Shown here in pieces: positions 88 through 49,794 of a DNA stretch of 62,957 nt; positions within the stretch are counted from its first letter, which is position 1, and each line of letters opens with the position of its first letter. The notes beneath the pieces were generated by a model, which saw nothing but the letters and a program-made list of their open reading frames with translations, was not told the origin of the DNA and ran no database searches. Origin of the DNA: Octopus bimaculoides (taxonomy: Eukaryota). The position numbers were made by a program, and so were the translations under genes. The stretch lies in assembly GCF_001194135.2 (NCBI RefSeq), contig NC_068997.1:38456054-38519010 (forward strand), in the 5' to 3' direction.

Positions 88-255
88 TATTCGACGATAT
101 TCTTTCAGTTTCCGTCTACCAAATCCACTCACAACCTTCTGGTCGGCCTGAAGATATACTAAAAGACACTTAACCAAGATGCCAGGTAGTGGGACTGAAT
201 CCGGAACCATTTGGCTGGAAAGTAAGCTTCTTACCACACAGCCACGTCTGTGCCT
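88..255 (-). mobile_element. tRNA-derived SINE, family A, 5' half
   Basis: Reverse complement reads gtggctgtgtggtaagaagcttac...ggttccggattcagtcccactacctggc...gtagacggaaactgaaagaa, then (TA)n. It has A/B-box-like motifs and matches 13050-13205, 33997-34130 and 43140-43320. Confidence 0.85.
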
Positions 256-1489
256 AGTATCCTAAACAATTTTCAAAATCATGGTACTCTTGTGAGGAAC
301 AGCAGTAATTAATAATTTATTCTACCATTCAAGATTATAATGAGTTGGATCGCTAATTTCCACACGCTTTAGTTAACTTTTCTTTAAGTGAGAGTTACTA
401 GTATGACTAATTTGTTCTAAAAAGTGATTTTGAATAATTTTTCTTAAATATATATCAATATTCCTAAATATTCTTAAAAGCTTCTGTTTATGTTATAAAT
501 AATTCAGAGTTTTTAAAACGAATTATTCACATTACTTCATCCGTAATATTCAGAACAATTTATTGTATTATTATCATGTTTTTGATATTAATAACTTCCA
601 GCCTTCCAATGACAGTTCTTGAATATTACATTAAGTTTTGTATTCAATGCTTAACTTACTACAATATGTTGTATATCGAATTCATTTTCTTTAGTTCTTT
701 CACTCAATAACTTTTAAATAGAGCTAACCTTTAAGTATTCTAGATCAATATTAAATCTTAATTTCAAGTGAAATGTTATATTCATAGATAATTTTATTTC
801 CAATAGTATTCCATATTGAGACTTGATGAAGGATTAAATTGAATGTCTTTTCTATTGATCTACAAGCATATCAACGGTAATGAGTAGTGCAGACGATAAT
901 ATAAAGCAGAAGATGCACACAGATATTATACACGCACACACATAAACGTTAAAATAACTGCATAGTTACCTCTACACCTACATTCATCGGCAGTCTCAAA
1001 TATGCACATATACTCACACAACTGGATGTGGAGACAAACGCACACATACTCACAGAAAGATATAAAACCGAATGTAATACTGAGTAGATAGATTTATGCA
1101 GAAAGCACATTACGCTTCTCTTGGCAATTTTAGATCTTATTCTATATTTTTGCCTTGATGGAAAATATCCATTAAAAGTAGTCAGAGGACATGTACGCGT
1201 TTTCATGTGTGTGTGGGGAGGGGTATATATAAAACACGGAAACGAGGTGAAAAAGTACACAAACGCTCGAAAAACTGTGGGTGGAATAAAAGGAAAAGTA
1301 TTTATGCTTCGAGTACACGCTCTTCTTCTGAAAGAAAGGGGTGACAAGGAGAGGGAAAAACCGACGAAAGAAAATGGAGAAAAGGAAAACACTTGTACAT
1401 AATCGTCACGGCATGCTGAAAAGACAAGAAGTGATACAGAGGTTGCTTCAAGTATGAGCTGCAAAAAAGACAGCTGTGAATCTGGCTAC

Positions 1490-1494
<5 letters not shown>

Positions 1495-1540
<46 letters not shown>

Positions 1541-1650
1541 CGCGTGTGTNNNNNNNNNNGTGTGTGTGTGCGCGCGCGCGTGTGTGTGTGTGTAAGGAAG
1601 CTATTAGGTATGTGTTTATTGCGTGTGTGTACGTGTGTATATGTGTGTGT
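1495..1650. repeat. (GT)n microsatellite with embedded (CG)n runs
   Basis: Directly visible; includes a 10-N gap. Confidence 0.95.
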
Positions 1651-1777
1651 ATATAGCGATGCGTCTAGGTGTGTGAGTGAAGTGGAAAAAAGTGGTGGGG
1701 GAACATGATAAGGAGTTGAGAATTTAAGCTGTTGAACACCGAAATTTGCAGAGAAAAAAAATCAGTTCCTGTTCCAG

Positions 1778-1887
1778 ACGGAGAAAAGAGTCAGCGGTTC
1801 TCTGTGCAAGATCATTCCGATCAGAGACAGATGTTGAAGAGAATGTACAGTCGAACGGAAGCAGCGCGAAACCGGGACGCCATTACC
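1778..1887 (+). other. candidate 110-bp host exon, gene unknown
   Basis: Acceptor ttcctgttccag| at 1777 and donor |gtaagt at 1888. Two of three frames are open (RRKESAVLCARSFRSETDVEENVQSNGSSAKPGRHY; GEKSQRFSVQDHSDQRQMLKRMYSRTEAARNRDAIT). The region is CpG-rich relative to its flanks. No homology recognised. Confidence 0.3.
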
Positions 1888-3159
1888 GTAAGTGTTAGAT
1901 AAAACGGTCAACCAGGCGACAACCATTTTGTTGCATGTAGAAGAGAAGCAAAATGAGCAGAGAATGCAGTAAATGAGATTACGTAGACGAGAGCAAGGAA
2001 AGGAGACAGGTTAAGTACCGAGAGTGAAGAAAGAGCTACGGACCAGTAAGTTACGTAGATTACGGATGCTTTTGAAAAAAGGGAGGGGTGGGCTGGAGAA
2101 GGTGTGGAAGGTGGCGGGATTTGATTGGACTGTGTAAAGAGCACATTAAAATGCACACACACAAACATATTAATTATTAACACACACACGCGTACACACT
2201 CACACAAACTTAACAAGCATGTATATAATGAGCACGCTCCTATTTGGGTGGAATGTTTGGCTGGCTCTAGCTTACGGAAATACCTACAGTACCATGTAAG
2301 TGAAAGTGCTAAGATGTGGAATTCATAGGAATCCTAGGAGCTCTAATAAAAGATTAATTCCCTAAAATTCCTAAACTAACAAACTACAGTATTATTTTAG
2401 TGACAGCCTCAAAACTTTCGAATCTGAAAATTTACATTATAAGTGGAAATATCAATGAAATAATTCTTTCTACAAAAGGCACAAGGCCTGAAATTTTGGA
2501 GATTGATTGCATCGACACCACTGCTACTGGTACTTAATTATCAACTCCGAAAATACGAAAGGCAAAATAATAACAAATGTTTACTTTTGCCTTCGTGGGA
2601 CAAAATTTGCAGGTGATGTGAGGCCAAATGTTCGGCTCAAGGTGTTGCTACAAAAGCAACGAGGTGCAAGCAACGCACTACTGGTAAAAGAACGATCTAA
2701 TTGTTATGCAATCCAAAGAAAATAATAATAATATTACTGATATATTTTTGTACAAGAATCTAATATTGAGCGAACGCAGCCCAGATTTGCTTGTAATAGA
2801 GCAATTTTTCTCAAAATATCTTGCAACATTGCCAACTTGTAAATACATGACATGGACAGCTGCAACGGAGACTATGAAGCCATAGCCAGAGATACAGCAG
2901 GCGTTCTGAGTGCGTCAGCACGCCGGAGTTCATTCAACAACTTCAGGACAAGATGGTGTGAGGCTACTACAAACTTTAGTCAAATCTTGAATGGAGAGGT
3001 TTACTGTGGTGGCAAAGATCAAGGAGTTATTCGAAGATCTTCCCAGAGACACAATGAAGAACACATACGCCAGGTTGCAGAGCCGTCAACAAGCTACAGT
3101 GGAAGGTGAGGGAGGCCATCTTGAGTAAACGGAAGTTTATAGCGCTACTCAACAATAGA

Positions 3160-3680: not shown

Positions 3681-4261
3681 AAGCTGGTTCGCACCGGGTG
3701 TCAAACTGCCGACATCATGACTGCTGCCCAATGCTCTGTGAACACTGTAAAGGCTGAAAAATGTGACATGGACAGCTGCAACAGAGACTACGAAGCCGTA
3801 GCCAGCAGGAAGAGACACAGCAGGCGTTAAGAAAATACAACGAAGGAGAGAGGGAAATATATTTGTAGAGAGAAAGACAGAGGTAAAGAGGTATACGTAA
3901 GAAAAGAGATGCTGGAAAACAAAATGTCACTAGAATACAAAGATGGTCGATGTGTGTGTGTGTGTGTGTATACAGAGAGAGAGAGAGAGAGGTGGGGGAC
4001 GAGAGCGGTTAGTGCTTGCTGTTTTATATAATGTGATGCGATTTAATAAGACAAATGTGAAAGAACGAGACAAGAATTGCTGAAAATAGAAAAGGGATAT
4101 TGAAAATAGGAAAGGAATATTAATTAGAAGTTTATTTGTATTTATGAGGTGAAACGATATATAAACACATTTATATGGTGAAAAGGTAAATAAGCATTCA
4201 TTATAAACACCATCTACAAGGTGCATTCCAGAATGTTTGAGACATTTTAATGAGAGATATT

Positions 4262-4450
4262 CATACTCCGGGCAAAATGTTTAACGGCATTTCGTGTCTT
4301 TACGTTCTGAGTTCAAATTCCGCCGTGGTCGTCTTTGCCTTTCATCCTTTTCGGGTCGATAAAATAGGTACTATTCGAGCACTGGGGGTCGATGTAATCG
4401 ACTTAGCTCCTCCCCGAACTTGCTGGCCTTTTGCTAAAATTTGAAATCAA
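4262..4450 (+). mobile_element. tRNA-derived SINE, family B (Nin/Inv-like central domain)
   Basis: B-box gagttcaaattcc; core ttgcctttcatcctttt cgggtcgataaaat; tail gccttttgctaaaatttgaaa. Matches 13682, 18889, 48066 and 54653. Confidence 0.85.
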
Positions 4451-4475
4451 TAATTTTCTCCATTAATAATAAGGC

Positions 4476-5600: not shown

Positions 5601-6777
5601 AGTAAGGTGCGTTCAAAGTTCTATTACAGCCGTCTCGTTCAATCTGGAATAAAAAGTTAGCAGGTCAGCTTATTGACTATATAGTAATGATATAACAAAA
5701 TTACAATAATCTACAGCAATTAAACTACCTTTCCTAAAAGAAAGTCTCAAAACTTCTTGAATGCAGTTCATTTCTTTAACAGTGTGGTCGGTCACAAACT
5801 AAATTAACGCTTAGGTTAACATAATTTTTTTTAGATATATTTTCTTGGATATATTAAAGATCAAATAGCTAAGCTTCAAATATGAATATAGTAAATCAAT
5901 ATCGAAATGGAGAGAATCCACCAGAAACTGTGACACGAAGTATTTGTTAGAACAATTGAAAAAGCTATTATTTTGGATACAAATATGAAACCCAATACTA
6001 CACATGTATGTATGCAATATACAATTCAAATATACCTATATANNNNNNNNNNNNNNNNNNNNNNNNNNNNNNNNNNNNNNNNNNNNNNNNNNNNNNNNNN
6101 NNNNNNNNNNNNNNNNNNNNNNNNNNNNNNNNNNNNNNNNNNNNNNNNNNNNNNNNNNNNNNNNNNNNNNNNNNNNNNNNNNNNNNNNNNNNNNNNNNNN
6201 NNNNNNNNNNNNNNNNNNNNNNNNNNNNNNNNNNNNNNNNNNNNNNNNNNNNNNNNNNNNNNNNNNNNNNNNNNNNNNNNNNNNNNNNNNNNNNNNNNNN
6301 NNNNNNNNNNNNNNNNNNNNNNNNNNNNNNNNNNNNNNNNNNNNNNNNNNNNNNNNNNNNNNNNNNNNNNNNNNNNNNNNNNNNNNNNNNNNNNNNNNNN
6401 NNNNNNNNNNNNNNNNNNNNNNNNNNNNNNNNNNNNNNNNNNNNNNNNNNNNNNNNNNNNNNNNNNNNNNNNNNNNNNNNNNNNNNNNNNNNNNNNNNNN
6501 NNNNNNNNNNNNNNNNNNNNNNNNNNNNNNNNNNNNNNNNNNNNNNNNNNNNNNNNNNNNNNNNNNNNNNNNNNNNNNNNNNNNNNNNNNNNNNNNNNNN
6601 NNNNNNNNNNNNNNNNNNNNNNNNNNNNNNNNNNNNNNNNNNNNNNNNNNNNNNNNNNNNNNNNNNNNNNNNNNNNNNNNNNNNNNNNNNNNNNNNNNNN
6701 NNNNNNNNNNNNNNNNNNNNNNNNNNNNNNNNNNNNNNNNNNNNNNNNNNNNNNNNNNNNNNNNNNNNNNNNNNNNN

Positions 6778-8193
6778 ATATATATTCCTTATGCATTCCA
6801 AAACCGAGTTACAGATTTTGACGTATGGGGTATCAAAAGATTCAGTACTATTTCGGCTACAAATTAAACTTAATTTCCATTCACATATTTGCATTTCCAA
6901 AGTTTAACATTATAGTTTTTTCCATAAATCAACTATCGTAAACATGTTATACGATGACGTCACATTTTCTGTGTGTGTACCTTAAAAGACATCAGTCATC
7001 GCGGCACACACCTTCACTCACTCACTCTGTTTCTCATTTTCACTCTCTTTCTCTCTCACGCATATACGCGCGCGCGCGCGCATACGTCCATTTCATATAG
7101 ACGTACATACATCCTTCATCTTCTTTCTCTGTTCTCTTCGCTTTATCTTCTTTCAATTTCTGCTCTCTTCAAATAAATTCTTACGGAATGAGCGGAACAA
7201 ACACAGAAAAGATGCAATCTCTCCAGAAACAAGTATAAAGCAAGGAGGATTGTAGAAAACCGAAGGCAAGAGTCTGAAGAGAGATGAGATTTTCTCAAAA
7301 TCGGCAAATGCATGTTGCAGCAAATTCATATTTTAATAATGCTGGATTATTAAATCAATGTTTTAATGTTTGGACGGAGGTCCAGTAGAATAGCTCTCAG
7401 AAACAGACTACATACAAATTCTTTCTTCACAACTCCTAAAGCTGTTTTCAGATATGATCCATCCCATTCTTATAAAAATGATAACTCGGTCCAAATTGGT
7501 GTGCTAAACACAAATTGTCGTTTATGTAGAGCTTTAAAATTTTCAAATGAAACAAATGGTATGTGCTGCTCAGGCGGTCAGGTAACATTGCCAGCACTAC
7601 CAGCTCCTTCTCACCCTCTTATGAATCTTCTAGAAGGCACTTCCATCCAGTCAAAGGATTTTCTGAACATTATCAGACAATGCAACTCTGCATTTCAAAT
7701 GACATCGTTTGATGCGTCTAAGAAGATAGATAAACATGAATTTACGCCGACATCAATGTTCAAGGGCAAGTCTATCACCTCATTGGTTCCCTGTTACCCG
7801 CAAATGAACGACCACAGTTCCTCCAAATTTACTTTATGAGTGATGTAGGACAACAAACCCGACGGAAGTGTCAAAATTTCAGATGATGGGTCGTGTTAGA
7901 CACAGCGCCGACTGCTGCAAAGAAGAGCATATCCACTAACGGCTTTTCGGTGAGTTCAAAAATCACATAACCCCCCACTTCCAATTTTCCATGACAGGTT
8001 AGGGCCTGAAATACTCCAAACAGATGCATAGCATGTTGCTCAGTTGAATTAGCCCAGCATTTACTCCACAAATGTTTTGTTGTCAATGCTGCACTTTCCC
8101 ATATCCCCTGTTTCAACATAACTGTAATATATTATGTACAAACTATGCAACTGAGCCATTTTAATCCCGAACAATGCCGGGTATCTCTGCTAG
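6778..8193 (+). mobile_element. non-autonomous Helitron (RepHel N-terminal remnant plus 3' terminus)
   Basis: 7366-7870 reads CRLCRALKFSNETNGMCCSGGQVTLP...IRQCNSAFQMTSF...(frameshift) QGQVYHLIGSLLP..PQFLQIYF, typical of the Helitron RepHel N-terminus. The 3' end has hairpin cccg..cggg (8166-8181), then CTAG (8190-8193) and T. The 5' end probably lies in the gap. Confidence 0.85.
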
Positions 8194-16019: not shown

Positions 16020-16879
16020 AACACCCAAGAAAATGAAAAGGTGTTGGCAACAGCCGTACAATAATGTTCAGTTTTTTAATGCTAGTTAGTACTATTATAC
16101 CAATTTTAACTTTTTTTCAATAAGAGTAGAAACGGTAATTTATGATCTCTGCCAATTAGAAGAGATTAATATTCAATTTCTTTCACCCCTGCAAGCTTTA
16201 GCAACTTGTCGAGACTGATGCTCAGTTCGAACATTTGTAGGTCGCTTCCAGCAGGTAAAAGTCTCTACAGTACTCTTTGAGATGCAATTCAAGAAATGTT
16301 AAATGCATACATGTATACATGAATACATGTGTAGCAGGGAATGCCTATGTATTTACGATCATGAAAGACTTACACATTTTCATTTTTTTTCCTTCCTTTT
16401 TCCTTAGCCGCTAAGGTTTACCCCCCCCCCCCTTTTTTTTACTGTTCTTTGTATTGTTCCCTTTTTGTCGCTCTTAATTATTTATTATACATTTTCTTGT
16501 CAAGTTGTCTCGTCTCTACCGTTATCTATATTTAACTGCCAAATATTTAACTAGATATCCTCGGTTCTTCTTTGTCTCGTCTTCAAAACTTATCGACGAT
16601 ATCCACGGTTAATCACAAAGACTATGGTTAAGCATACAGAACAACAGTATGCAAATCCCTAAATCTCAATACCCAGTGAAATGAAAATTCCTCCGTTTCC
16701 ACGTTTTGTTTTATTTATTTATTTTTATTTATTTATTTATTTTCGCTTTGTGCCTTTCTCAAATTCTCATACCAATGCACATAGCCCTTCCCATCCACTA
16801 CTATCAGGATTTTGTCAACTTGCTATGACATTATTATTGCTTGTTCTTCTCTCCCTTTCTTTCACTATTTTTCTCCATC

Positions 16880-16970
16880 GTCCATCTCTCTCTCTCTTTC
16901 TTTCTTTCTCTCTCTCTCTTCCTCCCTCTTTCTCTCTCCCTTTCTCTCTCTCTTCCTCACTCTCTCTCTG

Positions 16971-17018
<48 letters not shown>

Positions 17019-17035
17019 CCTCTCTCTCTCTTACT
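16880..17035. repeat. (TC)n/(TCT)n pyrimidine microsatellite
   Basis: Directly visible. Confidence 0.95.
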
Positions 17036-17192
17036 CACTCATTCCGCTTTCTGTCTATTTCCTTTACTTTCCTTTACTCTTCCTACTTTCGTTCTGATAT
17101 CACTCAATCCTTTTTCAATACTACGCTGCAAGCAAGGAGGCGAACTGGTAGAAACGTCAGCACCTCGGGCGAAATGCTTAGCGGTATTTCGT

Positions 17193-18888
17193 CTCCGTGA
17201 ATTATTGTGAATTATTGTGAATACTGTTGTGTTACTTTGTGAAAACTATGTGAATTACTGTAAGTTGTCTCTGTAAATAACTGTGATTCTTTGTGGAATT
17301 ATTGCTGTTACGTTTCACGCGAGCCGCTGCATTTTTTCCCCAGCTATGGCAAGTGGTAGTGTCACCAGTATGGAGAGCTACGCCAGGGTCAATGCGTCGA
17401 GGAAGCCAGTGCCGCTGGAAACCAAGTTGATCAAGTTGGATATGGAAGAGGTGAGCAGAAGCAGGAATTTGATAGAAGTAGAGGGAGACTCATACAAATT
17501 GTACCCCGCAAAAGAGACTAAAGAAGACAACATTCTGAGGACAGTTGTGTATCGTACACAAGCTGTCGAAACCTGTAAAATTGAAATAGTGACGGAAGAG
17601 GAAATCGAGGAATGCGTGGGTGAAATTGTGAATGAAGCCACGTACATCAACAGAGGAAGAAAGTTCGGTACGGTAGAGGTGAGGTTCACCACTATAGAAG
17701 AGGCAACCAAGCATGCGACCAACATTTTAAGAAGTACAAAAATAGCATTACTACCAAGTTATAGAGGAAGAAGTGTGAAAATACGTATTCCCAGAGTTAC
17801 ACCAGAAATTAAACCAGAGTGATTGGTTGCAACAGTGCTGCCTGCAACCAAGGAGGAGCCGGAATTGGGACCAGTGGCGAAATCAAAAGTGCGCAAATGG
17901 TGGGGATTTGGACTCGAAATGTGGCTTTTTGCCACATTCGAGGACATAGAAAGAATTTCCTACCAGATAGAAGTGGAGGATGAGAGAACGTTAAATGTTG
18001 TAGTCGAGGGAAGGAAACCAAATTGCTACATATGCGGGGAAAGAGGTCATATGAAGACCAAATGCCCCCTATATGAGTTCACACAGCCACAGCAAGAGAA
18101 AGCACAAGCAGAGGAAGAAAACATTGTAGACCACACTGAGGAAATGAAAGAGAGACAGAAGTGTGAAACAGAGAAAATAAGGAGAAGAACGAAAATGGAG
18201 CTACTAACCCTAAAAAGCGAAAGAAAAATAAGTCAAAGGAACGGTCAACAGAAAACATAAAAGGGATAGAAAAGCAAGAAACTAATAATGTACAAGAAGA
18301 GGAGGAAAGAACGGATAAAGATGTCCAATACAAGGGGGTTTTGATAAAGTACGAGAATTGCCAGCAGATGGAAAGGAAAGTCGAGAGGTTGGAGGAAATA
18401 ATAAGAGGGAAGATGCCAGAGAAATGTGCTGAGAAATGCATTTTGATACATGAGGAAAACTACTGGGAGTACATAAAAGAACTTGGTGAAAATATAACGA
18501 TAAGGGTATGGTTGGTGGAGACACCACCCCCTAGAACTGATTATTTGCACTTGATAAACACACAAGTAACAGTGGTTAATGGGAGAAAGGTAACACGAGT
18601 GTTTCAATTGTTTGGGTTGCAAAACAGTTAACATGTTTACATGATGTTTAACGTAAAAGTGAAAAACTGGATAAATGTAACCACCCGACTTCGGGGTTCG
18701 AGTGGACATTGCGCCTCATATTTTCATTCTTGCATATTGTCATTTTATTTTAATTTTTCTTCTACTATTATCATTTGTTTTTGTATTTTTAGTTCCCCGA
18801 TTTTATGTTTGTTGCGTTTTGTACCGTCTTTATGTTTTGCGATGTCTTAAACATTTTTTGTATAGCCCTTTATGGGTAATAAAGAAAT
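17193..18888 (+). mobile_element. ORF1-only non-LTR retroelement (HAL1-like, probably Tx1/L1-derived)
   Basis: Bounded by an 11-bp TSD; single gag-like ORF; ends ccctttatggg-t-AATAAA-gaaat (AATAAA at 18878-18883). No endonuclease or RT motifs and no room for an ORF2. Confidence 0.8.
17346..18631 (+). pseudogene. gag-like ORF1p with CCHC zinc knuckle (about 428 aa when reconstructed)
   Basis: ATG at 17346. One in-frame TGA (17820-17822, KPE*LVA, probably TGG). CYICGERGHMKTKC = CX2CX4HX4C at 18024-18065. One frameshift between 18167 and 18257. NLS-like PKKRKK. Stop at 18629-18631. Confidence 0.8.
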
Positions 18889-20333
18889 CGGTATTTCGTG
18901 TGTCTTTACGTTCTGAGTTCAAATTCCGCCGAGGTTGACTTTACCTTCCATCTTTTCAGGGTCAATAAAATAAGTACCAGTTGCGTACTGGGGTCGATCT
19001 AATCGTCTGGCTCCCTCCCCCAAAATTTCGGACCTTGTGCCTAGAGTAGAAAAGAATACTACTCGGCGAGCTTTTGTACGTCTTCATCGCATCTCTCGCT
19101 ACTTTCATTCTTTGGTCTACTCCTAACCATTCGATGTTTTAAAAAGTCTTATTATATTTCTTTCATTAGATACTATCGGGAATTGTATTAAAAATGCTTC
19201 ATTCTTCGTCCAAGCTACTGAGGCTTCGCCATATATTTTTGTAGTTCTTTGTGTTGTACTCCTTCCTGTCACATTTTCTTACATAGATGTCTCTACTGTC
19301 TTCCTGTTTAACTGCGAAATATTTAGCTATATCTCAGTTGTTCTTTGTCTCGTCTACACTGGATCTATCTTTATTCGCCCAATATCTATGATTGATGGCG
19401 TGGGCTATCCTTAGGCATTGATATCCTAAACGCGGAAACAGTAAATTCCTAGATCTTAACTGGTGGTGAAAGGAAAACTTTCTGATTACTTCATCTGTAT
19501 TTGTCTTACTCATTTTGCGCACGTTTTCTTCTATACATGAAATGTGTGTAGGTGTATATATATATATATATATATATATATNNNNNNNNNNNNNNNNNNN
19601 NNNNNNNNNNNNNNNNNNNNNNNNNNNNNNNNNNNNNNNNNNNNNNNNNNNNNNNNNNNNNNNNNNNNNNNNNNNNNNNNNNNNNNNNNNNNNNNNNNNN
19701 NNNNNNNNNNNNNNNNNNNNNNNNNNNNNNNNNNNNNNNNNNNNNNNNNNNNNNNNNNNNNNNNNNNNNNNNNNNNNNNNNNNNNNNNNNNNNNNNNNNN
19801 NNNNNNNNNNNNNNNNNNNNNNNNNNNNNNNNNNNNNNNNNNNNNNNNNNNNNNNNNNNNNNNNNNNNNNNNNNNNNNNNNNNNNNNNNNNNNNNNNNNN
19901 NNNNNNNNNNNNNNNNNNNNNNNNNNTATATATATATATATATATATATATTCATTTATTTATTTCTATATACATATATATATATATTTATTTATATACA
20001 TTTCGTATTGGTTTGCAAGATTTTTTATGTGAGTTTGTGTGTTGAAGCATATTTTGTTGTGTCTGGGGAGAGTCATTCTCTTTTAGTACCTTATAATTTA
20101 ACACACTCACCGGCAAAATTTCCACTCATTTCCTTATTTATTTTTCTAAAATTTTCGTTGCGTCTTGCAGCCTTTTCAATAGTTGTTCACTGTCCGTTAT
20201 TCACATTGCGTTCTTTTTGTTCGTTTGTACGCATGTGTGTGGGTCAGTGTGTGTGTGTATGCATACACATGTATGTATGCATATGTGTATATGCATGTAT
20301 GTGTGTGTGAATATGTATATATGTATGTATGTG

Positions 20334-35325: not shown

Positions 35326-35483
35326 AGATTTATCCTTGGTTCCCGGCTAAAATGTCCTCCAAAACGGATCAGTCAGTTGACTCATGTCGACGCACAGAAT
35401 CTCCTCGAGAATGTCTTCGGTCTTTCCCATTACTAACTCTCTATAGAACGTCATGGTGAAAATCTCACCGACCTCACTATCTG
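35326..35483 (-). mobile_element. Tx1-like ORF2 fragment
   Basis: Near-identical reverse complement of 39331-39490. Confidence 0.75.
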
Positions 35484-35539
35484 ACTGGTAGAATCATTTT
35501 AATTTAAAGTATAAACGCTGTTTGCACGTACTTTGTTTT

Positions 35540-37859: not shown

Positions 37860-40175
37860 GAAAGCTACAATTCGGTCTTTGGTAGATCGGAAGTGGAGCG
37901 TACTACTCCATTATAGGCAGATATATACGCTTTGCACTTCGCTCAACTGTTTGGGACGGATGAAAAGTCGGAGACAGGGTTGAACTTTACCGTCAATGAC
38001 ATGAAAAGACGCTCAACTGGTGATGCAGAGTTTTGCGAAAGGCCGATAACAGCTGATGATATATTACGGGCAAGTGCCTGGCGGCCAATAATTCTCCTGC
38101 GCTCAGGTTTCAAGAATTTGGCCAAAGCGTTTGCCATAAGGTTGACGGTCTCTTTGGTTATGCGCAAACATGTACCACCCCACCCAGATCTATCCATAAA
38201 AAGCCTCCTCCTCGTGCAATATATCATAAAGAGGATTCATAAGGAACCTGACATGGATGGAGCCTCAGTCAACTTGGATCAATCGACAGCCTTCGATATG
38301 GTCGACTACCAATACTTGGCGACTGTTTTCAAGGCAACTGGTTTCGCTCCCGTCTTCAGAAGCTATAATGTACAGCGATATATCAACCGGTGGTCAGAGT
38401 AAATGGCCATCTGTTGGAACCGTTCAGCATCATGTATCCGTACGTACTGACTCTAGATCCACTTCTATAGAAGTTGAAGGTTTCGATGTGCATCCCACGA
38501 GAACTAGCATGCGGAAGATCTGTGTTTTCATATTGGATGATATCAGCATAAGCGTCGGACAGCAAACACCGCGTGGTGATCGACACTTCTCTAAGGGGAT
38601 ACGAGTCAGATGGAGTGTCTACATTACCACTCTCCCTTTCTCTTCACCGTGGTTGAGCAGAATGGAACACCTGCTCTTCTGCTTTCTGTGAAGAAAACAT
38701 GTCCCACTAATCGGACGCTCCATCTAGACACTTTTCCGCAGCTGTTCGATAATGCTCAAGTACTGCATGATCGCATGCAGCTCGGTTTCGTCGCTTTGCA
38801 TGTATCTTGGACGGGTGCGCTCGACGGCACTACCACATCTGCAGAATTTATCTCGAACTGACAGTATCCCCCACTCTACCCTAGTATCGCTATCACGACC
38901 AGAATTTCTGAAAATTATTCATGGGCTTCGGCCCGAAAGCACTTTGAAAAAAAAAACAGTCAGTTGTTTTTCATCAACGGCCAGATTTGCCTCGAGAATT
39001 TCGTTGCCCTTACACTTAATTGTTCTACAGAATACCATGGCGAAACATCCACCGATCGCAATAACCGACTGGCACTGCCATATATAACCGCCTGATCATT
39101 GTACCTTAACCCAGTTCACGTCTGCCAGTTCGCTTTCTGTGGAGGGGAGCGTTACACTAACGAGGCGCTCCTTTTGCTCTCAAAAGGAGGGGTGAACAGG
39201 TATGGTCACTATTAGTCAGAGATTCATTTTTTTCCACAGCTCGTCATTTTGACAGAGTTGTAGTCTTAGGTGAAGCAAGGGTCTAAACAGAGCGCTTGAC
39301 ATTCAGAATGTCGTCAAGCCCTCACAGCCTTCTACCAGTCAGTGAGGTCGGTAGAATTTTCACCATGACGTTCTATATAGAGTTAGTAATGGGAAAGACC
39401 TAAGATGTTCTGGGGAAGAATCTGTGCGTCGACATGAATCAACTGACTGATCCGTTTTGGGGGACTTTTTAGCTGGGAACCAAGGATAAATTGCAGAAAT
39501 CTCCGCCCTGGCAATGCTATCGGTGTAGGAGGTGGAGAAGCACAGCTGGTTCGAGGTAAACTGTACAGGCATAGAAGTACCGTCAACCAAGCCCGCCTGA
39601 GACTTGCTCAGAGCGACGAAACTGTTCTGCACGCACATTTCCAGTGCCCAAGTATTGCTGATTAGTAGAGTTATGTCGTAAATCTGCTATCTCGTGTATG
39701 TTGGATCCAGCTATCAACTGAGTCCGTTGCGAAGATAGCTCTGCGGCCTTCATTTGGCCGGGAAGACTAGGCAGTGTTTATGTATCTGATTGCCCGAAGC
39801 CAGATTGAAAGAGCTAAAAACAGACACCTCTTTGGCCAAGCCCCCATACACTTTTACAAGTTTCATTGGAAAAGGGAAGTGAGGATGTTGAAGGGTTGGT
39901 GAGAATGGTGAGCATGGTTCCGTGAGCATGGTTCCGTGAGCTAGCCTCCTCTGAGCTTGCGCCTGTAGATTAAGGGGAGACAACAAGAAGGCACGTGCCT
40001 TAGTGGTTAGGACGATCGCTATTTTGTGCGGTTTCCACAAGTAGCCCTAAGAAGTCCTGCTTTCTTGTAGAATTATTCTTTGCTGAAATGTATTGTTACT
40101 GTTCTTCCTCTTACACGCTCCTTTATATAATCCCACATTGTACCGTTTTGTACCGTCCCCATGCCTGTCGCTAAG
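37860..40175 (+). mobile_element. Tx1/L1-clade ORF2 remnant with internal deletions and 3' UTR
   Basis: WRPIILL..FKNLAKAFAIRL; NLDQSTAFDMVDYQYL; LDDISI (YADD-like); WQCYR; QSDETVLHAHFQCP (C-terminal Cys/His motif). Confidence 0.8.
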
Positions 40176-40623: not shown

Positions 40624-42349
40624 CACAGCGTCAATGCTCTTCTCAATACGACAATCTTTTGCACTTCCTATTCCTTTTCAGATCCTTTTTTGATTATTTC
40701 AAGTGTTCCTACATTCACTGGTATTGTAACCGTCTTGAGATGGCACGTCTTTTCGATTTCGATTAACAAATCTTTATATTTTCTGAACTTATCAAATTCT
40801 TTTGCCGAAATATTATGGTCACAGAGTATGCACATGTCAATCAATAAATAGACTTTATTGCCCTTGTCTTTCACAACAATATCTGGTTTATTTGCTTTGT
40901 TGGTCCGGTCTGTACATACTGGAAAGTCCCAAATAATCGTTACATTCTCTCCTTCAGTTACAGTCTCACGGTGGTACTTATACCATTTCTCAGCAGTTTT
41001 GATTTTATAATGCTGACACATTATCCAATGTAGGTATCGGCTAACTCTTGATTTATACACTACCTTACACCCAGGTATTAGGTGGTCCACTTTCAATCCC
41101 ATCGTTGCAGTATCGGCACTTTGTGTCTACACCATTTTTTATCACATTGGCTTGATAGTTCCGGGTCAATAAGCTCTGATCTTGAGCAGCCAAGATAAAG
41201 CCTTCACTCTTTGCCTTTAGCCCTGAGCTCCGTAGCCACTGATGGATGTGCTTCTGGTCTACATCATTCTTCAACGGTTATTTTCACCTTCCCTATTTCG
41301 CTGTAGAATGTTTTCGCATTGGATGTGAACAGCTTATTTTGCTTGTAAAACTTTCTCTTCTTAAAACTTCGTATTCTTTGAGCTTTTGCTTGGACATTTT
41401 GTTGCAATGTTATCTTTGTTGAAAGTAGTTCTTCTCTTGGTGAGAATCTATGTTTTCTCTTCATCTTTCTTCCTTTTCTGACTTTTACAGTGTTTCCACA
41501 GATTAGTTCATTCAATATTGATATTTCACCTCTCATTATTTCAATCTCTCTTTCAATTTCACATTTCCTGTTTGGAATTCTTCTCAGGTTTGTATTTCTT
41601 TGTTTTTTCAGAGGCATACAATTGGTTTCAATGGTTTTAGCAGCTGCGTAAAGAATTTCGTTTAACTCAGTGAGATCTGGTTTTAATTCTTGTATAATTT
41701 CTTTTGTTACATAGTTTCCAATCTTAATTTGTTTTCTATTTTGGATTGTATTTGAGAGTTTATGAAGTGGTTCTCTCTATTGGTGTGTTTTACAACTGCA
41801 AGCTAACTCAAGATTTTCGGCTTCATTTTGATCGTAGACTCTCTATGTTCTTCAGTAAATATGTGGTCTTCAAATATTTTGTCTTTACCACTTTCCTCGT
41901 TATCTTTATCGGCTCATTACAATTTATTTCTTCAGACGTTTGCGTGTTCTAGTCAAATGAGACTCGTGGAGTCTCATTTCGTCTGGTTCTTTATTTCCTT
42001 TCTGACATATATTTAAGTCAGTTTCCGCTGCGTGCTTAATTGCGGTTATTTCGGTATCTGTGAGTCTTATTTCTGAAGATATCCCTCTTAACATTTACTA
42101 ATTTGCTTTTGTCCAAATATAGTCTACTGTCTTGATTTTGAGTTCTCTATATTTGATAAGAGTGTGCGGTGTGTTTCTCTTCAGATGGTCTACCAAATGC
42201 CTAGTAATAGGCGTATATTACCTCTGTACACTCTCCTCGGGTTCATTTGGTCCTCTTACATTTTTCTTTCTATAATGGTTGTGATGGTGAACTTGGAGGG
42301 CTCGATTTTGGGAAGTTCCCATTCAAATGACCCTCCTGGTTTGTATTCC
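40624..42349 (-). mobile_element. RLE-type (R4-like) LINE with RT deleted
   Basis: QAKAQRIR..YKQNKLFTSNAKTFY is joined almost directly to QWLRSSGLKAKSEGFILAAQDQ..CRYC; then ANKPDIVVKDK..LIDM..KYKDL. Confidence 0.85.
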
Positions 42350-43115
42350 NNNNNNNNNNNNNNNNNNNNNNNNNNNNNNNNNNNNNNNNNNNNNNNNNNN
42401 NNNNNNNNNNNNNNNNNNNNNNNNNNNNNNNNNNNNNNNNNNNNNNNNNNNNNNNNNNNNNNNNNNNNNNNNNNNNNNNNNNNNNNNNNNNNNNNNNNNN
42501 NNNNNNNNNNNNNNNNNNNNNNNNNNNNNNNNNNNNNNNNNNNNNNNNNNNNNNNNNNNNNNNNNNNNNNNNNNNNNNNNNNNNNNNNNNNNNNNNNNNN
42601 NNNNNNNNNNNNNNNNNNNNNNNNNNNNNNNNNNNNNNNNNNNNNNNNNNNNNNNNNNNNNNNNNNNNNNNNNNNNNNNNNNNNNNNNNNNNNNNNNNNN
42701 NNNNNNNNNNNNNNNNNNNNNNNNNNNNNNNNNNNNNNNNNNNNNNNNNNNNNNNNNNNNNNNNNNNNNNNNNNNNNNNNNNNNNNNNNNNNNNNNNNNN
42801 NNNNNNNNNNNNNNNNNNNNNNNNNNNNNNNNNNNNNNNNNNNNNNNNNNNNNNNNNNNNNNNNNNNNNNNNNNNNNNNNNNNNNNNNNNNNNNNNNNNN
42901 NNNNNNNNNNNNNNNNNNNNNNNNNNNNNNNNNNNNNNNNNNNNNNNNNNNNNNNNNNNNNNNNNNNNNNNNNNNNNNNNNNNNNNNNNNNNNNNNNNNN
43001 NNNNNNNNNNNNNNNNNNNNNNNNNNNNNNNNNNNNNNNNNNNNNNNNNNNNNNNNNNNNNNNNNNNNNNNNNNNNNNNNNNNNNNNNNNNNNNNNNNNN
43101 NNNNNNNNNNNNNNN

Positions 43116-43139
<24 letters not shown>

Positions 43140-43151
<12 letters not shown>

Positions 43152-43320
43152 ACATACGCATATATACGACGGGTTTCTTTCAGTTTCCGTCCACCAAATC
43201 CACTCACAAAGCTTTGGTCAGCCCGAGGCTATAGTAGAAGACACTTGCCCAAGGTGTCATGCAGTGGGACTGAACCTGAAACCATGTGGTTAGTAAGCAA
43301 GCTACTTACCACAGATCGAC
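43140..43320 (-). mobile_element. SINE family A, 5' half
   Basis: Reverse complement of the family A head. Confidence 0.9.
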
Positions 43321-43783
43321 TACTGCGGCTATGTTGAATTTTTCTTTTCTTTTTATAGGTTTTGCTGTGGTTTACTGTTTTCATAATTGTGCATTTTGTA
43401 TATATTGGCGGTTGCTAATCGCCTTAATTTTTATCGTACGTTTAATAGTGTTGTTGTAATAAAAGGTATGTTTACATATTCGAGTAGTCAGGGAAAAAAA
43501 TAAAGGTAAAATTTTCACAGAAAATTGTAGATATTAAAGTTTTTAAATCTTCTAAAGATGATCGTTAGTATGTCCGAACAGAGAAAACAGTAGTGTTCTT
43601 GCAATAAAAGGGATGTTTGCATTTTCGAATTCTCAGGGGAAAAGGCAAGGATAGATATTCACAGAAAGTTGTAGATATTAAAGATCTTAAGTTTTTAAGT
43701 GTTTAAAGACGATCGTTTGTGTGCTCGGCCCCAGTAAAACTATAGATATGAAAGCTTTTAAACTTACTTTGAAGGAAATTTTA

Positions 43784-44595: not shown

Positions 44596-47500
44596 CATTT
44601 ATCAATATATTCAAATCCTAGCTTTCTACAAAGATCCCAGTGGACTGCTCTCCCTAGATTGTCATGTCTTTGTATTCTTTCTGTGCCAGCATACTACATT
44701 CACTTACTATATGAGTAACTCTTTCCTCTTTTGATTTACATAATTTACATTGGGAATCTACTTGGTCTTTGGCTATCTTGGCTTTAATCGAATTAGTCCT
44801 TAATACTTGATCTTGTGCAGCTACTAACAAACTTTCTGTCTCCCTCTTCAGCTTTCCTTTCTGCTACCATAACCATTTCTCGCTACTAGTATTTGCTGCT
44901 ACTATCTTTGGGAATCTACCATGCATCACATACTCCTACCAGACAGATAATTTCTGTTCTTTTTTATGATTTTTAAGTTCGTTTGGGTTTTTGGTTTCCC
45001 AATGTCTTGCTGTGACTCTAGCAGCTTTTAATAAACTTTTTTCACGATTAACTACATAAGAGTCTATATCTACTCTAGCTAACTCCACACAATCTTCCAC
45101 TGATATTAACCCTCTTCCGCCTTCCTTTCTAGGTAGGTATAATCTTGCTACTCCTGCCCTTGGATGGAGTCATCCATTCATATTGAATTCCTTCCTAGCT
45201 CTTCTGCCTGGCTTTGCTAATTCAGTTATTGCCTAATCTACAAAAGTTTCTGAGTAACAAAGTAATGATACTGCTCAGATATTTACAGCCTTCACTAGAT
45301 TCGGACCATTTAGATTTGACTCCATTACCTTCCTCACCCTTCTGTACGCCTTCTCAGTTTTCGTTTTCATTTCTGTAGCTAGTACTCTGTCAGATTCTAA
45401 TACTCCTAGATACTTATGACTCTCTCCTCCTTTCAATGATTTTAATGCCTGGCCATCTGGTAATTGGATACCTTCACTGTTGACTACCTGTCCCCTTCTC
45501 GTGACTAATATTGCACATTTACGTATGCCAAATTCCATGCCTGTATTTTTGGTGAAGTGTCTTACAGTCTGTATTAAGGAATCTATCTCTTTTTCATTCT
45601 TACTAAAAAGCTTCAGATCATCCGTGTAGAATAAATGGTTAATTTTTTCCTTACTATTTCTGAACTAATACCCTGTCTTTGCCTTCCTTAATACTAAACT
45701 GAGGGGGATCAATCATAAGACAAATATTAAAGTGAACAATGAGTCCCTCTGGAAAATTCCTCTTTTAATATTAACTTTCTCTAGGCGTGTGCCACCTAAG
45801 TAGAAATCTACTTTCCATTTCTTCATGCTACAGCTAATTAATTCTCTTATGTTGTCTGCTATACTGAATATACTCGAACACTCACTAATCCACGGGTGTG
45901 GAATTATGTCATAGGCTTTCTTATTATCTATCCATGCTGATGTTAGATTTTTCTTTCCAGCTTTTACTTAATTCAGAACTGCTTTGTCTATATATAATAG
46001 GTTGTGCGTTCCTCTAGACTTCTTCCTGCAACCTTTCTGTTCTTCTGGCAGTAAATTCTGGTTGTCAAGGTACTCGTAAATGCTTTCTGAAAGCATTCCT
46101 GTTAACAGCTTCCACACTAATGGTAAGCAAGTGATTGGTCTACAATTACTAGCTGTATTACCCTTGCTCTTATCTTTCATAATGTGTATTGTTCTCCCTT
46201 TACTCATCCAATCTGGTATTATTCCTCCATTAAGGCAATCCTGAAGTTGTTCCCTCAGCCTCCCATGTAAACAACTGAATTTCTTTAGCCAGTACCCTAG
46301 AACTAAATCTGGTCCTGGACCCTTCCAATTCGGCATTTTTCTTCACATTTTACTCATTAATCCACTAGTTAATCTTAGATCTGGCTGCTTCTCACTCACT
46401 ACTTCCCTCACTTTCTTTAACCATACTGCATCTCCATTATGATTGGCCATCCCAAATATTACTCCAGAACTTTCTAGCTTCTTCTTCTTTAGGTTTCCCA
46501 TCTTCAATACTTTCTTCTCCACTATTTATTTGGTGATAAAATCTCCTCTGATCTGTCTCAATAATCTATTCTGTTGATACTGATCTATTCTTTTCTGATA
46601 TCTGGAGAGCTGGCCTGCTACCGCTATGATACACTGTTTCGACACTTCTGTTACTATCCCAAATTCTTTCTCTTTCACTAAGTATGTTTTCTCGGGGGAA
46701 GATTTTTATCTCGTGTTTCCTAAATTGTTTGTTTTCCAGACTTCTATTTTACTCAGATTTTGTCTTAAAGTCTTCTCTTTATTTTGTAGTCTACTTTTCC
46801 ACATTTGCTCTTTTTTAATCTTTCCCTGTGAGACATCTAATTTTCTGGTGACTACTACTCCTCCTGCATAGATCAATAACTTAGTTTCTCCTATATTTTT
46901 AGTATCTGGATAGATTACTGATAACAGAGTTTACTTTCCTAGTCATTTCTAGCAGCTTCCTCCTGTTGGCGCCTTTTAATGCTGGCAATCTTTTTCTTAC
47001 TTCTTTACTCTTTACTTCCTGCAACTTATCAAAAATCTTCTGATCTTCCTCACTTAAATTACTTAAGTCATTGGTGCCAGTTGTCCCTTCCTTATTAGAA
47101 GCTCTATTATTTTTTCTTTTAGGTTATTCTTTGGTTTGAACTGCATCTCTTATGTTGTTGCTTGCCTTTCCCGCTACCTGATCTTTCTTTTCCAGTTCTC
47201 TTTTGATCTCTTCTACCTCTAATTATGTTTCCCACTTTCTTCTCTTAATAGTATTAGCTTTATCAACTAATCTTTGCTCAGTCACTTTAAACTTACCCTT
47301 CTCTACTCAGAGTGTTAATATCCGTTTTCTATAGCCTTTCTTTTAAGTTCACTTTCTAAGTAGCACTGCATCACTATCCTGTTTTCTTCGCTGGTCCACT
47401 TCCTCCTCCTTGCTCTATTATCTGCTGATGCTGTATTAGGATAAGAGCTGTCGTCAGTCTGCATCTGTACTGAACCACTGCCTAGCGAGAGGCCTTCCCT

Positions 47501-48065: not shown

Positions 48066-48495
48066 CATTCTGAGTTCAAATTCCGCCGAGGTCGACTTTG
48101 CCTTTTCTCCTTTCGGGTCGAAAAAACAAGTACCAGTTGAACACTGGGGTCGATGTAATCGACTCATCCCCTTCCCCAAAATGGTTGCCCTTGTGGCAAA
48201 ATTTGAAACCATTATTGTTGTTGTTGTCGTCGGCGTCGTCGTCGTTGTTGTTGTTGCTGCTGTTAAGGTGAAGGGCTGGTAAAATCGTTAGCACACTGGA
48301 CAAAATGTTTAGCGACATTTCTTCCGGTTTTACGTTCTGAGTTCAAATGTCAACGACGTTGATTTTGTGCTTCATCATTTCGGGGTCAAAAAATAAGAAA
48401 CAGTTGGATACTGAGGTCAATGTAATCGACTACTTTTCTTCCAACAAATGTCAGGCCTTGTACCTATAGTAGAAAGGATTATTACTATTATTATT
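48066..48495 (+). mobile_element. two tandem SINE family B copies (48066-48212 and 48262-48495)
   Basis: Two gagttcaaat B-boxes and two cores, separated by (GTT/GTC)n and flanked by (ATT)n. Confidence 0.85.
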
Positions 48496-49462: not shown

Positions 49463-49503
<41 letters not shown>

Positions 49504-49686
49504 NNNNNNNNNNNNNNNNNNNNNNNNNNNNNNNNNNNNNNNNNNNNNNNNNNNNNNNNNNNNNNNNNNNNNNNNNNTGTGTGTGCGTGTGTGTGCGTGC
49601 GTGTGTGCGTGCGTGTGTGTGTGTGTGTGTGTGTATGTGTGTGTGATCGTGTGTGTTTGTGTATGTGTGTGCACGCACGTGTGTGT

Positions 49687-49687
<1 letters not shown>

Positions 49688-49719
<32 letters not shown>

Positions 49720-49794
49720 AAAATAAAGAAAGAAAGAAAGAAAGAAATAAAAAGAAAGAAAGAAATAAAAAGAAAGAAAGAAACAAAAAATGAA

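What the first reader, a model, noticed from the sequence alone, without database searches (positions are those of the whole stretch)
17193..18888. ORF1-only (gag-only) retroelement
Seen: 1,696 bp between perfect 11-bp TSDs, a roughly 150-nt 5' UTR, one ORF of about 428 codons with CX2CX4HX4C and PKKRKK that is broken only by one TGA and one frameshift, a 257-nt 3' UTR, and AATAAA at the end. No endonuclease or RT. Known: HAL1-type 'half-L1' elements encode only ORF1p and are mobilised in trans. I am not aware of a described cephalopod example, but cannot check. Inference: because both ends and the TSD are present, the element moved in this form and did not lose ORF2 afterwards, which implies a benefit from encoding its own RNA-binding protein.
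Basis: partly seen in the sequence, partly recalled or inferred. Interest (0 to 1): 0.85.

Follow-up and report, generated by a model that had tools for sequence, protein, structure and literature searches.

The report
ORF1-only retroelement targeting an octopus SINE
This is a real, complete copy of an octopus "half-LINE": a 1.7-kb retroelement that encodes only an RNA-binding ORF1 protein, has no reverse transcriptase, inserts at one precise spot in a SINE repeat, and must borrow its copying enzyme from a related full-length LINE.

Summary
A 1,696-bp insert (17193-18888) sits between perfect 11-bp duplications. It interrupts a SINE copy that runs straight through this point in three other copies in the window.

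It has one 428-codon ORF, broken only by TGG->TGA at 17820 and a 1-bp deletion near 18179/18180. There is no endonuclease or RT, no LTRs or TIRs, and no poly(A) tail.

The ORF is a genuine LINE ORF1. It is 35% identical to the ORF1 that precedes an intact L1/Tx1-group ORF2 in Octopus vulgaris. The predicted fold is two RRMs followed by a CCHC knuckle.

Two more copies in O. bimaculoides (83-87% identical) lie at the same nucleotide of unrelated copies of the same SINE. One has both junctions, so the element moves in this ORF1-only form and appears site-specific.

A sister lineage in O. vulgaris (one solo copy with an 18-bp TSD, plus head-to-tail arrays) shares only its last 47 nt with the neighbouring LINE. 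Its ORF1 is under purifying selection (dN/dS about 0.2).

Verdict: a non-autonomous, ORF1-only LINE derivative that works like HAL1 or HeT-A. The type-I ORF1, the specific 3' tail and the SINE targeting are new. Repbase and Dfam could not be checked.

The parts
17128..17192 (+). 5' part of the host SINE copy that was interrupted
   Evidence: The reconstructed empty site aligns colinearly with SINE copies at 54790-55030, 4240-4456 and 48250-48485.
17182..17192 (+). Left target-site duplication, CGGTATTTCGT
   Evidence: Perfect 11-bp direct repeat of 18889-18899. It is single-copy in uninterrupted SINEs.
17193..17345 (+). 5' UTR (153 nt) with GTGAATTATT tandem motifs. A promoter role is inferred, not tested.
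   Evidence: The L006 copy starts at the same nucleotide, CTC(C/T)GTGAATTATTGTGAAT.
17346..18631 (+). ORF1 of 428 codons, disabled by two lesions
   Evidence: Translation. It is 74-86% identical to O. bimaculoides gene models, 37-54% to the O. vulgaris lineage, and 35% to the ORF1 of a full LINE.
17541..17762 (+). RRM-like domain 1 (contains RGRKFGTVEVRF). Boundaries are approximate.
   Evidence: AF2 model of the 78%-identical relative P0001 with a 150-sequence MSA: pLDDT >90 and beta-alpha-beta-beta-alpha-beta topology. Foldseek top hits are tandem-RRM proteins.
17766..18005 (+). RRM-like domain 2. Boundaries are approximate.
17820..17822 (+). In-frame TGA. The ancestral codon was TGG (Trp).
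   Evidence: Relatives read PEWLVATVL at this position.
18024..18065 (+). CCHC zinc knuckle, CYICGERGHMKTKC
   Evidence: Pfam PF00098, E = 2.4e-4, above its cut-off. Profile hits to retroviral nucleocapsid knuckles.
18179..18180 (+). Site of the 1-bp deletion (frameshift) in an A-run
   Evidence: Relatives read CETEKTKEKNENGATNPKK. The window needs one extra A to keep this frame.
18209..18226 (+). Basic PKKRKK motif in the Lys/Glu-rich linker. An NLS role is inferred only.
18329..18628 (+). C-terminal domain of ORF1p
   Evidence: The motif ILIHEENYWEYIKELGENI matches ILIEKEEHKKLKEAF / IVIEKENYRKLKEMCGDNV in distant family members. It is intact in the L005 copy.
18632..18888 (+). 3' UTR (257 nt)
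18673..18705 (+). Core of a 3'UTR stretch (about 134 nt, 18673-18806) conserved between the two ORF1-only lineages. A possible hairpin is not statistically supported.
   Evidence: About 77% identity to O. vulgaris units although synonymous sites are saturated. Fold z-scores are +0.27 and -1.76.
18851..18888 (+). 3' tail ending GCCCTTTATGGGTAATAAAGAAAT (AATAAA at 18878-18883), with no poly(A)
   Evidence: Same terminal motif as the O. vulgaris ORF1-only units, the O. vulgaris LINE and one SINE subfamily.
18889..18899 (+). Right target-site duplication, CGGTATTTCGT
18889..19057 (+). 3' part of the host SINE copy

Best explanation
The insert is a full-length but recently inactivated copy of a non-autonomous, ORF1-only derivative of an L1/Tx1-group LINE.

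Shown:
- It encodes only a type-I ORF1 protein: two RRM folds, one CCHC knuckle, a charged linker and a C-terminal domain.
- It has no endonuclease or RT.
- It integrated with an 11-bp TSD.
- Relatives with the same termini occupy the same nucleotide of unrelated copies of one SINE family.
- In O. vulgaris a sister lineage shares its last 47 nt, and its integration site, with an intact LINE.
- ORF1 evolves under purifying selection.

Inferred mechanism:
1. The element is transcribed from its own 5' UTR.
2. Its ORF1p coats its own RNA in cis.
3. The ORF2 protein (APE endonuclease plus RT) of a partner LINE recognises the shared 3' tail (...GTGGGTAATAA[A/T][G/A]AAAT).
4. That protein nicks a specific target sequence and copies the RNA by target-primed reverse transcription.

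Supplying its own ORF1p is presumably what lets a 1.7-kb RNA compete for the partner's ORF2p.
For: Structure and integration:
- TSD and restored empty site.
- No LTR or TIR. No RT or endonuclease match inside the insert.

ORF1 identity:
- 35% identity (E = 2e-26) to the ORF1 lying upstream of an intact 1,129-aa ORF2 in O. vulgaris.
- That ORF2 has Exo_endo_phos, RVT_1 and zf-RVT domains. Its best solved-structure match is human L1 ORF2p, E = 1e-64.
- AF2 model at pLDDT >90 over the folded core, with tandem-RRM Foldseek hits, plus Pfam zf-CCHC.

Moved in this form:
- L006 has both termini at the same nucleotides. L005 has the same 3' junction.
- Sequence beyond the SINE is unrelated between loci.
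- The occupied SINE halves are no more alike (76-79%) than occupied versus empty SINEs (78-81%). The elements themselves are 83-87% identical.
- The SINE tails differ between the occupied copies.

Multicopy:
- At least 7 O. bimaculoides gene models.
- 16 full units at three O. vulgaris loci: 15 in head-to-tail arrays plus one solo copy, all lacking ORF2.
- The solo copy has a perfect 18-bp TSD.

Partner LINE:
- The last 47 nt are 93.6% identical between the ORF1-only unit and the LINE, while the rest of the UTRs do not align.

Selection:
- O. vulgaris units: variable sites are 4.1% / 3.6% / 11.8% at codon positions 1 / 2 / 3 (Fisher p = 6e-8). dN/dS is 0.19-0.24.
- Window versus L005 and L006: third-position excess of about 1.6-fold (p = 5e-4 and 0.03).
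Against: - No partner LINE was identified in the window's own lineage or genome. The trans-mobilisation step rests on the O. vulgaris pair and on general LINE/SINE biology.
- The neighbouring O. vulgaris LINE has an ORF1 only 31-35% identical, so it is not the direct parent.
- Only three copies of the window's lineage could be inspected. One has its 5' end in an assembly gap and one has an internal gap.
- In L006 the upstream TSD copy is degraded (GTGGTATAACGG).
- Only 1 of 16 O. vulgaris units has the full 467-aa ORF.
- Transcription, translation and RNA binding are untested.
- RNA folds of the tail and of the conserved block are not better than shuffles.
Confidence: 0.8

Rival explanations
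1. Recurrent by-product: the ORF1-only copies are repeatedly made from ORF2-deleted or spliced RNAs of an unsampled autonomous LINE with a nearly identical ORF1. They would not form a self-propagating lineage, and the selection signal would come from the parent.
For: - Only a handful of loci could be sampled.
- Purifying selection cannot by itself separate this case from a self-propagating lineage.
- Most copies are already disabled.
Against: - All six loci reached through ORF1-type proteins or the window (about 19 copies, two species) lack ORF2.
- The only ORF2-bearing relative found has 31-35% ORF1 identity and shares only 47 nt of 3' UTR.
- Both ORF1-only lineages share a 3'UTR stretch that is absent from the LINE. 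This points to descent from an ORF1-only ancestor.
Confidence: 0.1
2. Host gene family: a domesticated ORF1-derived CCHC gene, amplified by tandem duplication in O. vulgaris. The window copy would be a retrocopy or pseudogene of it.
For: - dN/dS is about 0.2.
- Tandem arrays are annotated as genes.
- Several UniProt and RefSeq gene models exist.
Against: - Copies carry TSDs and a LINE-type 3' tail, with no poly(A).
- Three copies sit at the same SINE nucleotide in unrelated SINEs.
- 15 of 16 array units are frameshifted.
- The partner LINE forms the same kind of array.
Confidence: 0.04
3. Composite unit: the mobile entity is the whole SINE carrying the insert, copied through the SINE's own tail. 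The shared junctions would then be inherited rather than re-created.
For: - The same junctions occur in three copies.
- One SINE subfamily has the LINE-type tail.
Against: - The SINE halves of occupied copies are no closer to each other than to empty SINEs (76-79% versus 78-81%), while the inserts are 83-87% identical.
- SINE tails differ between occupied copies.
- The window copy has a perfect 11-bp duplication of its own SINE's sequence.
Confidence: 0.04
4. A full LINE inserted here and lost ORF2 by deletion afterwards.
For: None beyond the absence of ORF2.
Against: Independent copies in two species have the same ORF1-stop to 3'UTR arrangement and total length, about 1.7-1.78 kb.
Confidence: 0.01

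Closest known systems
HAL1 ('half-L1') of mammals
   Same: A non-autonomous L1 derivative that encodes only ORF1p and is mobilised in trans. HAL1s arose several times independently (PMC5753468, citing Smit 1999 and Bao & Jurka 2010).
   Different: From my own knowledge of mammalian L1, not tested here: HAL1 derives from mammalian L1, has the type-II ORF1p (coiled coil, RRM, CTD), ends in poly(A) and inserts at loose TT/AAAA sites. The octopus element has a type-I ORF1p (RRM-RRM-CCHC), no poly(A), a specific 3' tail shared with its LINE, and a fixed target.
HeT-A of Drosophila telomeres
   Same: A Gag/ORF1-only non-LTR element with CCHC knuckles that does not encode an RT and depends on another element's RT (PMC5537684). 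It forms head-to-tail arrays by repeated targeted insertion, as the O. vulgaris units do.
   Different: From my own knowledge, not tested here: HeT-A belongs to the Jockey clade, transposes to chromosome ends without needing a nick, and is domesticated for telomere maintenance. The octopus elements are internal, TSD-flanked, and linked to an L1/Tx1-group LINE.
Tx1-clade sequence-specific LINEs (Tx1L in Tx1D, Keno, Kibi, Koshi)
   Same: Many Tx1-clade elements show target sequence preference, and Tx1 inserts into another transposon family (PMC4494074). The octopus partner LINE has APE, RT and zf-RVT domains, and it and its ORF1-only dependants use fixed sites inside other repeats.
   Different: The families named in that paper are LINEs, which as a class carry an ORF2 (PMC4120745). 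Clade membership of the octopus LINE was not tested by phylogeny.
SINE/LINE pairs with shared 3' tails
   Same: A short 3' tail shared between a non-autonomous element and its LINE (Kajikawa & Okada 2002, as cited in PMC4494074). Here 47 nt are shared at 93.6% identity.
   Different: The dependant is not a small-RNA-headed SINE. It is a 1.7-kb protein-coding element.

Membership tests
Non-LTR (LINE-derived) retroelement insertion | Target-site duplication with a verifiable empty site; no LTRs or TIRs | tested here: met
   11-bp TSD. The SINE is restored when the insert is removed. No terminal direct or inverted repeats.
Non-LTR (LINE-derived) retroelement insertion | The coding sequence is homologous to the ORF1 of an element that carries APE and RT domains | tested here: met
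   35% identity, E = 2e-26, to the ORF1 upstream of an intact ORF2 with Exo_endo_phos, RVT_1 and zf-RVT.
ORF1-only non-autonomous LINE derivative (the functional class of HAL1 and HeT-A) | Full-length copies contain ORF1 but no endonuclease or RT, in several independent insertions | tested here: met
   Window, L005 and L006, plus 16 O. vulgaris units.
ORF1-only non-autonomous LINE derivative (the functional class of HAL1 and HeT-A) | Mobilised in trans by a partner's ORF2p | not testable with these tools
   Indirect evidence only: a shared 47-nt tail and a shared integration site with a LINE in O. vulgaris.
HAL1 (Repbase family, mammals) | Derived from mammalian L1, with a type-II ORF1p (Transposase_22: coiled coil, RRM, CTD) | tested here: not met
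   No Transposase_22 hit. The fold is tandem RRM plus a CCHC knuckle.
HAL1 (Repbase family, mammals) | Poly(A) 3' end | tested here: not met
   The element ends GGGTAATAAAGAAAT directly at the TSD.
Type-I ORF1p (Khazina & Weichenrieder classes, as summarised in PMC4120745) | [quoted passage not shown] | tested here: met
   Two RRM-topology domains at pLDDT >90, followed by the knuckle, in the AF2 model of the 78%-identical relative P0001. Tandem-RRM Foldseek hits have E about 1e-4 and probability about 1.0. Pfam zf-CCHC also matches. This is a predicted structure, not a solved one.
L1 superfamily (L1/Tx1 group), for the partner LINE | ORF2 with an N-terminal APE endonuclease, an RT and a C-terminal zf-RVT / CCHC motif | tested here: met
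   Pfam hits. Human L1 ORF2p is the best PDB sequence match, E = 1e-64, spanning endonuclease and RT.
Tx1 clade | RT phylogeny groups the element with Tx1 reference elements | not tested
   No reference set was available. The only hints are one automated 'Transposon TX1' name among the hits and target-specific behaviour.
Sequence-specific retroelement | Independent insertions at the same nucleotide of a repeated target | tested here: met
   3 of 3 inspected copies of the window's lineage are at ...GCTTAG|CGGTATTTCGT of unrelated SINE copies. O. vulgaris copies are at GAA|CACATGG, with locus-specific TSD variants. The sample is small.

The most novel reading that the evidence does not exclude
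A long-lived, half-autonomous retroelement lineage in octopuses. It keeps only its RNA-packaging gene under purifying selection and parasitises the ORF2 protein of a Tx1-like LINE through a shared 47-nt tail. It inherits that enzyme's sequence specificity, so it lands in a fixed site of a SINE head (window lineage) or builds head-to-tail arrays (O. vulgaris lineage). The two ORF1-only lineages share a 3'UTR stretch although their synonymous sites are saturated. This suggests the ORF1-only state is ancient rather than a recurrent accident.
Probability: 0.5. Interest if true: 0.7.

Novelty: new variant of a known kind. Interest (0 to 1): 0.6.

Why it matters
ORF1-only LINE derivatives are known from very few systems (mammalian HAL1, Drosophila HeT-A). 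Why a parasite of a parasite should keep ORF1 is still an open question about cis-preference.

This octopus family gives an independent invertebrate case with:
- a different ORF1 type;
- measurable purifying selection on ORF1;
- a defined 3' recognition tail shared by a LINE, an ORF1-only element and a SINE subfamily;
- a precise DNA target.

That makes two questions directly testable in a retrotransposition assay: is the element's own ORF1p needed in cis, and is the tail sufficient for ORF2p capture?

It also matters for annotation. Copies are currently annotated as 'CCHC-type domain-containing' or 'uncharacterized' octopus genes. The only full-length octopus LINEs reported in the one octopus LINE study read here were RTE and Dong (PMC9115989).

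Tried and rejected
- Pfam on the ORF found only zf-CCHC. There was no Transposase_22, RRM or DUF4283 hit. A profile search against PDB sequences found only zinc knuckles.
- The first AF2 run, with a 9-sequence MSA, gave pLDDT 40 and was discarded. The 150-sequence MSA was needed.
- RNA folding of the 3' tail and of the conserved 3'UTR block gave z-scores from +0.42 to -1.76, so no structure is claimed.
- The 5' UTRs of the window element, the O. vulgaris unit and the LINE show no significant similarity.
- ARAGORN and Rfam do not recognise the SINE head as a tRNA. 'tRNA-derived' is therefore not claimed.
- Cross-species dN/dS is unusable because synonymous sites are saturated (pS = 0.78).
- Tandem Repeats Finder missed the 1.78-kb arrays because of its period limit.
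- Contig look-ups failed for P0001, P0049, P0051 and P0197. P0054 gave only 1-kb contigs.
- The organism behind assembly GCA_024449705.1 (L004, a 58%-identical ORF2 whose contig ends ...CATGGGT) could not be identified.
- Bao & Jurka 2010 could not be opened.
- The post-insertion deletion, processed-pseudogene and composite-SINE readings were considered and rejected (see the rival explanations).

Full report
**1. The observation**

The region reads as the first stage described it.
- CGGTATTTCGT occurs at 17182-17192 and again at 18889-18899, bracketing 1,696 bp.
- The repeat finder reports this as the only terminal repeat and finds no LTRs or terminal inverted repeats.
- An ATG at 17346 opens a frame of 428 codons that ends with TAA at 18629-18631.
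- The frame is interrupted by TGA at 17820-17822 and by one frameshift.
- Alignment with relatives shows the TGA was TGG (Trp in PEWLVATVL). It also shows the frameshift is a 1-bp deletion in an A-run at about 18179/18180.
- The CX2CX4HX4C knuckle is at 18024-18065 (Pfam zf-CCHC) and PKKRKK is at 18209-18226.
- The 3' UTR is 257 nt. AATAAA lies 5 nt from the end and there is no A-tail.

**2. The TSD is real**

The flanks belong to a SINE. Joining 17080-17192 to 18900-19060, with one repeat copy removed, gives a sequence that aligns without interruption to SINE copies at 54790-55030, 4240-4456 and 48250-48485 in the same window. Each of those copies carries the 11-mer once. This empty-site test is independent of the repeat itself.

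**3. What the ORF is**

*Close relatives.* The closest proteins are O. bimaculoides gene models named 'CCHC-type domain-containing' or 'uncharacterized' (59-83% identity over the aligned parts). A more distant group is in O. vulgaris at 54%. A profile search of 1.84 billion cluster representatives found 666 clusters at E <= 1e-3. Most are short fragments, and none of the 150 aligned and scanned has an RT or endonuclease domain.

*Link to a LINE.* In O. vulgaris a related ORF1 lies directly upstream of an intact 1,129-aa ORF2.
- This ORF1 is 35% identical to the window's (E = 2e-26).
- The ORF2 has Exo_endo_phos, RVT_1 and zf-RVT domains.
- The best match of the ORF2 among solved structures is human L1 ORF2p, E = 1e-64.

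The window's ORF is therefore a LINE ORF1 of the L1/Tx1 group.

*Fold.* With a 150-sequence alignment, AlphaFold gave pLDDT >90 over residues 20-240 of the 78%-identical relative P0001. The model shows two beta-alpha-beta-beta-alpha-beta domains followed by the knuckle and long helices. Foldseek against the PDB returns tandem-RRM proteins: Hsh49, NONO/SFPQ, U2AF65 and IMP3 RRM12 (E about 1e-4, probability about 1). This is the type-I ORF1p layout, an RRM immediately upstream of a CCHC knuckle (PMC4120745). A C-terminal domain is conserved across distant members.

**4. It moved as an ORF1-only unit, to a fixed site**

Two further copies were recovered from O. bimaculoides assembly GCA_001194135.2.
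- L005 (CM046624.1) is 85% identical over element positions 78-1696. Its 5' end lies in an assembly gap.
- L006 (CM046603.1) is 84-87% identical and has both termini.
- Both end ...AAAGAAAT|CGGTATTTCGT, followed by the 3' part of the same SINE family.
- L006 also begins CTCTGTGAATTATTGTGAAT immediately after the SINE 5' part, as in the window.

Several results show these are separate insertions into different SINE copies.
- Beyond the SINE the loci are unrelated.
- The occupied SINE halves are no more similar to each other (76-79%) than to empty SINEs (78-81%), while the inserts are 83-87% identical.
- L006's SINE has a different 3' tail from the window's.

So three independent insertions hit the same nucleotide of different SINE copies. 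This also rules out later loss of ORF2. The window holds three SINE copies that span the site and are unoccupied. Only one of them matches the target consensus within three mismatches.

**5. The sister lineage and the partner LINE in O. vulgaris**

*Copies.* L001 and L003 hold 8 and more than 7 head-to-tail units of about 1,779 bp. Each is a 5'UTR, an ORF1 and a 3'UTR ending GGGTAATAATAAAAT. L002 holds a solo unit flanked by a perfect 18-bp TSD, CACATGGCTCCAAGCTAT.

*Insertion site.* At all three loci the units sit at the same point, GAA|CACATGG, immediately 5' of the LINE. The host there is a decayed ORF1-type fragment. The TSD variant in L002 differs from the one in L001 and L003. This argues for separate insertions at one site.

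*Shared tail.* The LINE's last 47 nt are 93.6% identical to the unit's 3' end, whereas the rest of the UTRs and the 5' UTRs do not align.

*LINE arrays.* The LINE itself forms head-to-tail arrays elsewhere (L007).

A shared tail together with a shared target is the pattern expected if the LINE's ORF2p mobilises the ORF1-only RNA. That step is inferred, not shown.

**6. Selection on ORF1**

- Among 16 O. vulgaris units, variable sites are 4.1%, 3.6% and 11.8% at codon positions 1, 2 and 3 (Fisher p = 6e-8). The UTRs vary at 9-19% of sites.
- dN/dS between locus consensus sequences is 0.19-0.24.
- Between the window copy and L005 or L006, third positions carry about 1.6-fold more differences (p = 5e-4 and 0.03).
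- L005 keeps a 365-codon open stretch despite 15% divergence from the window copy.
- Only 1 of 16 O. vulgaris units has the full 467-aa ORF, so most genomic copies are dead. The lineages that gave rise to them kept ORF1 functional.
- Between the two lineages, synonymous sites are saturated (pS = 0.78, pN = 0.31). Even so, a 134-nt 3'UTR stretch starting at 18673 (core 18673-18705) is about 77% identical and is absent from the LINE. This hints at an old ORF1-only ancestor.

**7. Rivals**

- A recurrent by-product of an unsampled parent LINE cannot be excluded with about 19 copies from six loci. Nothing found supports it.
- A domesticated gene family does not fit the TSDs, the LINE-type tail, the repeated SINE site and the frameshifted array units.
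- A composite SINE-borne unit does not fit the SINE comparisons.

**8. Comparison with known elements, and novelty**

Functionally the element belongs with HAL1 (PMC5753468) and HeT-A (PMC5537684). It fails HAL1's defining features, which are the type-II ORF1p and the poly(A) end. Its target specificity and its L1-superfamily ORF2 recall the Tx1 clade (PMC4494074), but no RT phylogeny was possible.

The one octopus LINE study I read reports only RTE and Dong full-length LINEs (PMC9115989). I found no description of this family, but I could not query Repbase or Dfam.

The window's species was not established. The close copies are in O. bimaculoides.

Noticed in passing
L001 4268-18505; L003 1-12856 (O. 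vulgaris): ORF1-only units form head-to-tail arrays of at least 8 units (period about 1,779 bp). Each junction carries a variant of the about 18-bp target sequence. Junctions are uniform in L001 and heterogeneous in L003. This suggests a mix of repeated same-site insertion and unequal crossing-over.
   Followed up: partly
L007 4929-19184 (O. vulgaris OX597840.1): The partner LINE itself occurs as three head-to-tail copies with a period of about 5.28 kb. It carries a 5' UTR different from that of the L002 copy.
   Followed up: partly
L006 8937-9113 (O. bimaculoides): A SINE subfamily ends in TGTCCCCTCTATGTTTAGCCCATTGTGGGCAATAAAGAAAT, the same tail as the LINE and the ORF1-only elements. This LINE family is therefore probably also the SINE's mobiliser. 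The SINE copies in the window carry a different tail, and the LINE-type tail is absent from the window.
   Followed up: partly
L002 8609-9301 and 16298-16792; also L001 and L003: The O. vulgaris composite [flank][ORF1-only]n[LINE][flank] recurs on three chromosomes with the same outer boundaries. The target lies inside a decayed ORF1-like fragment, and (TA)n runs border the composite in L001 and L002. How the composite spread is unexplained.
   Followed up: partly
window 37917-39881 (+), 45701-46324 (-), 35329-35526 (-): Degraded LINE RT and C-terminal fragments, 26-42% identical to the O. vulgaris LINE ORF2. These are other LINE families, not the partner.
   Followed up: no
window 16680-17030: A long CT-rich microsatellite lies directly upstream of the interrupted SINE. 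Several other stretches (for example 5973-6907, 42164-43337, 49219-49955, 58703-59401) are stop-free in many frames on both strands, which suggests low-complexity repeats.
   Followed up: no
L006 8001-29887: The NCBI gene model LOC128247323 (XP_052822357/8) starts inside the ORF1-only copy and runs on for 22 kb, with a 267-aa product. It is probably a chimeric annotation. The UniProt entries A0A0L8FKL1, A0A0L8ICM9, A0A0L8HUA5, A0A0L8GL55 and A0A0L8FZD3 are also copies of this element.
   Followed up: no
L004 (GCA_024449705.1, JAANSU011340864.1) 240-3091: An ORF2 58% identical to the O. vulgaris LINE ORF2. Its 3' UTR runs off the contig at ...CATTCATGGGT, so it possibly has the same terminal motif. 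The source organism was not identified.
   Followed up: no
window 17197-17266: The 5' UTR begins with two to three GTGAATTATT-type tandem motifs. L006 has one fewer.
   Followed up: no
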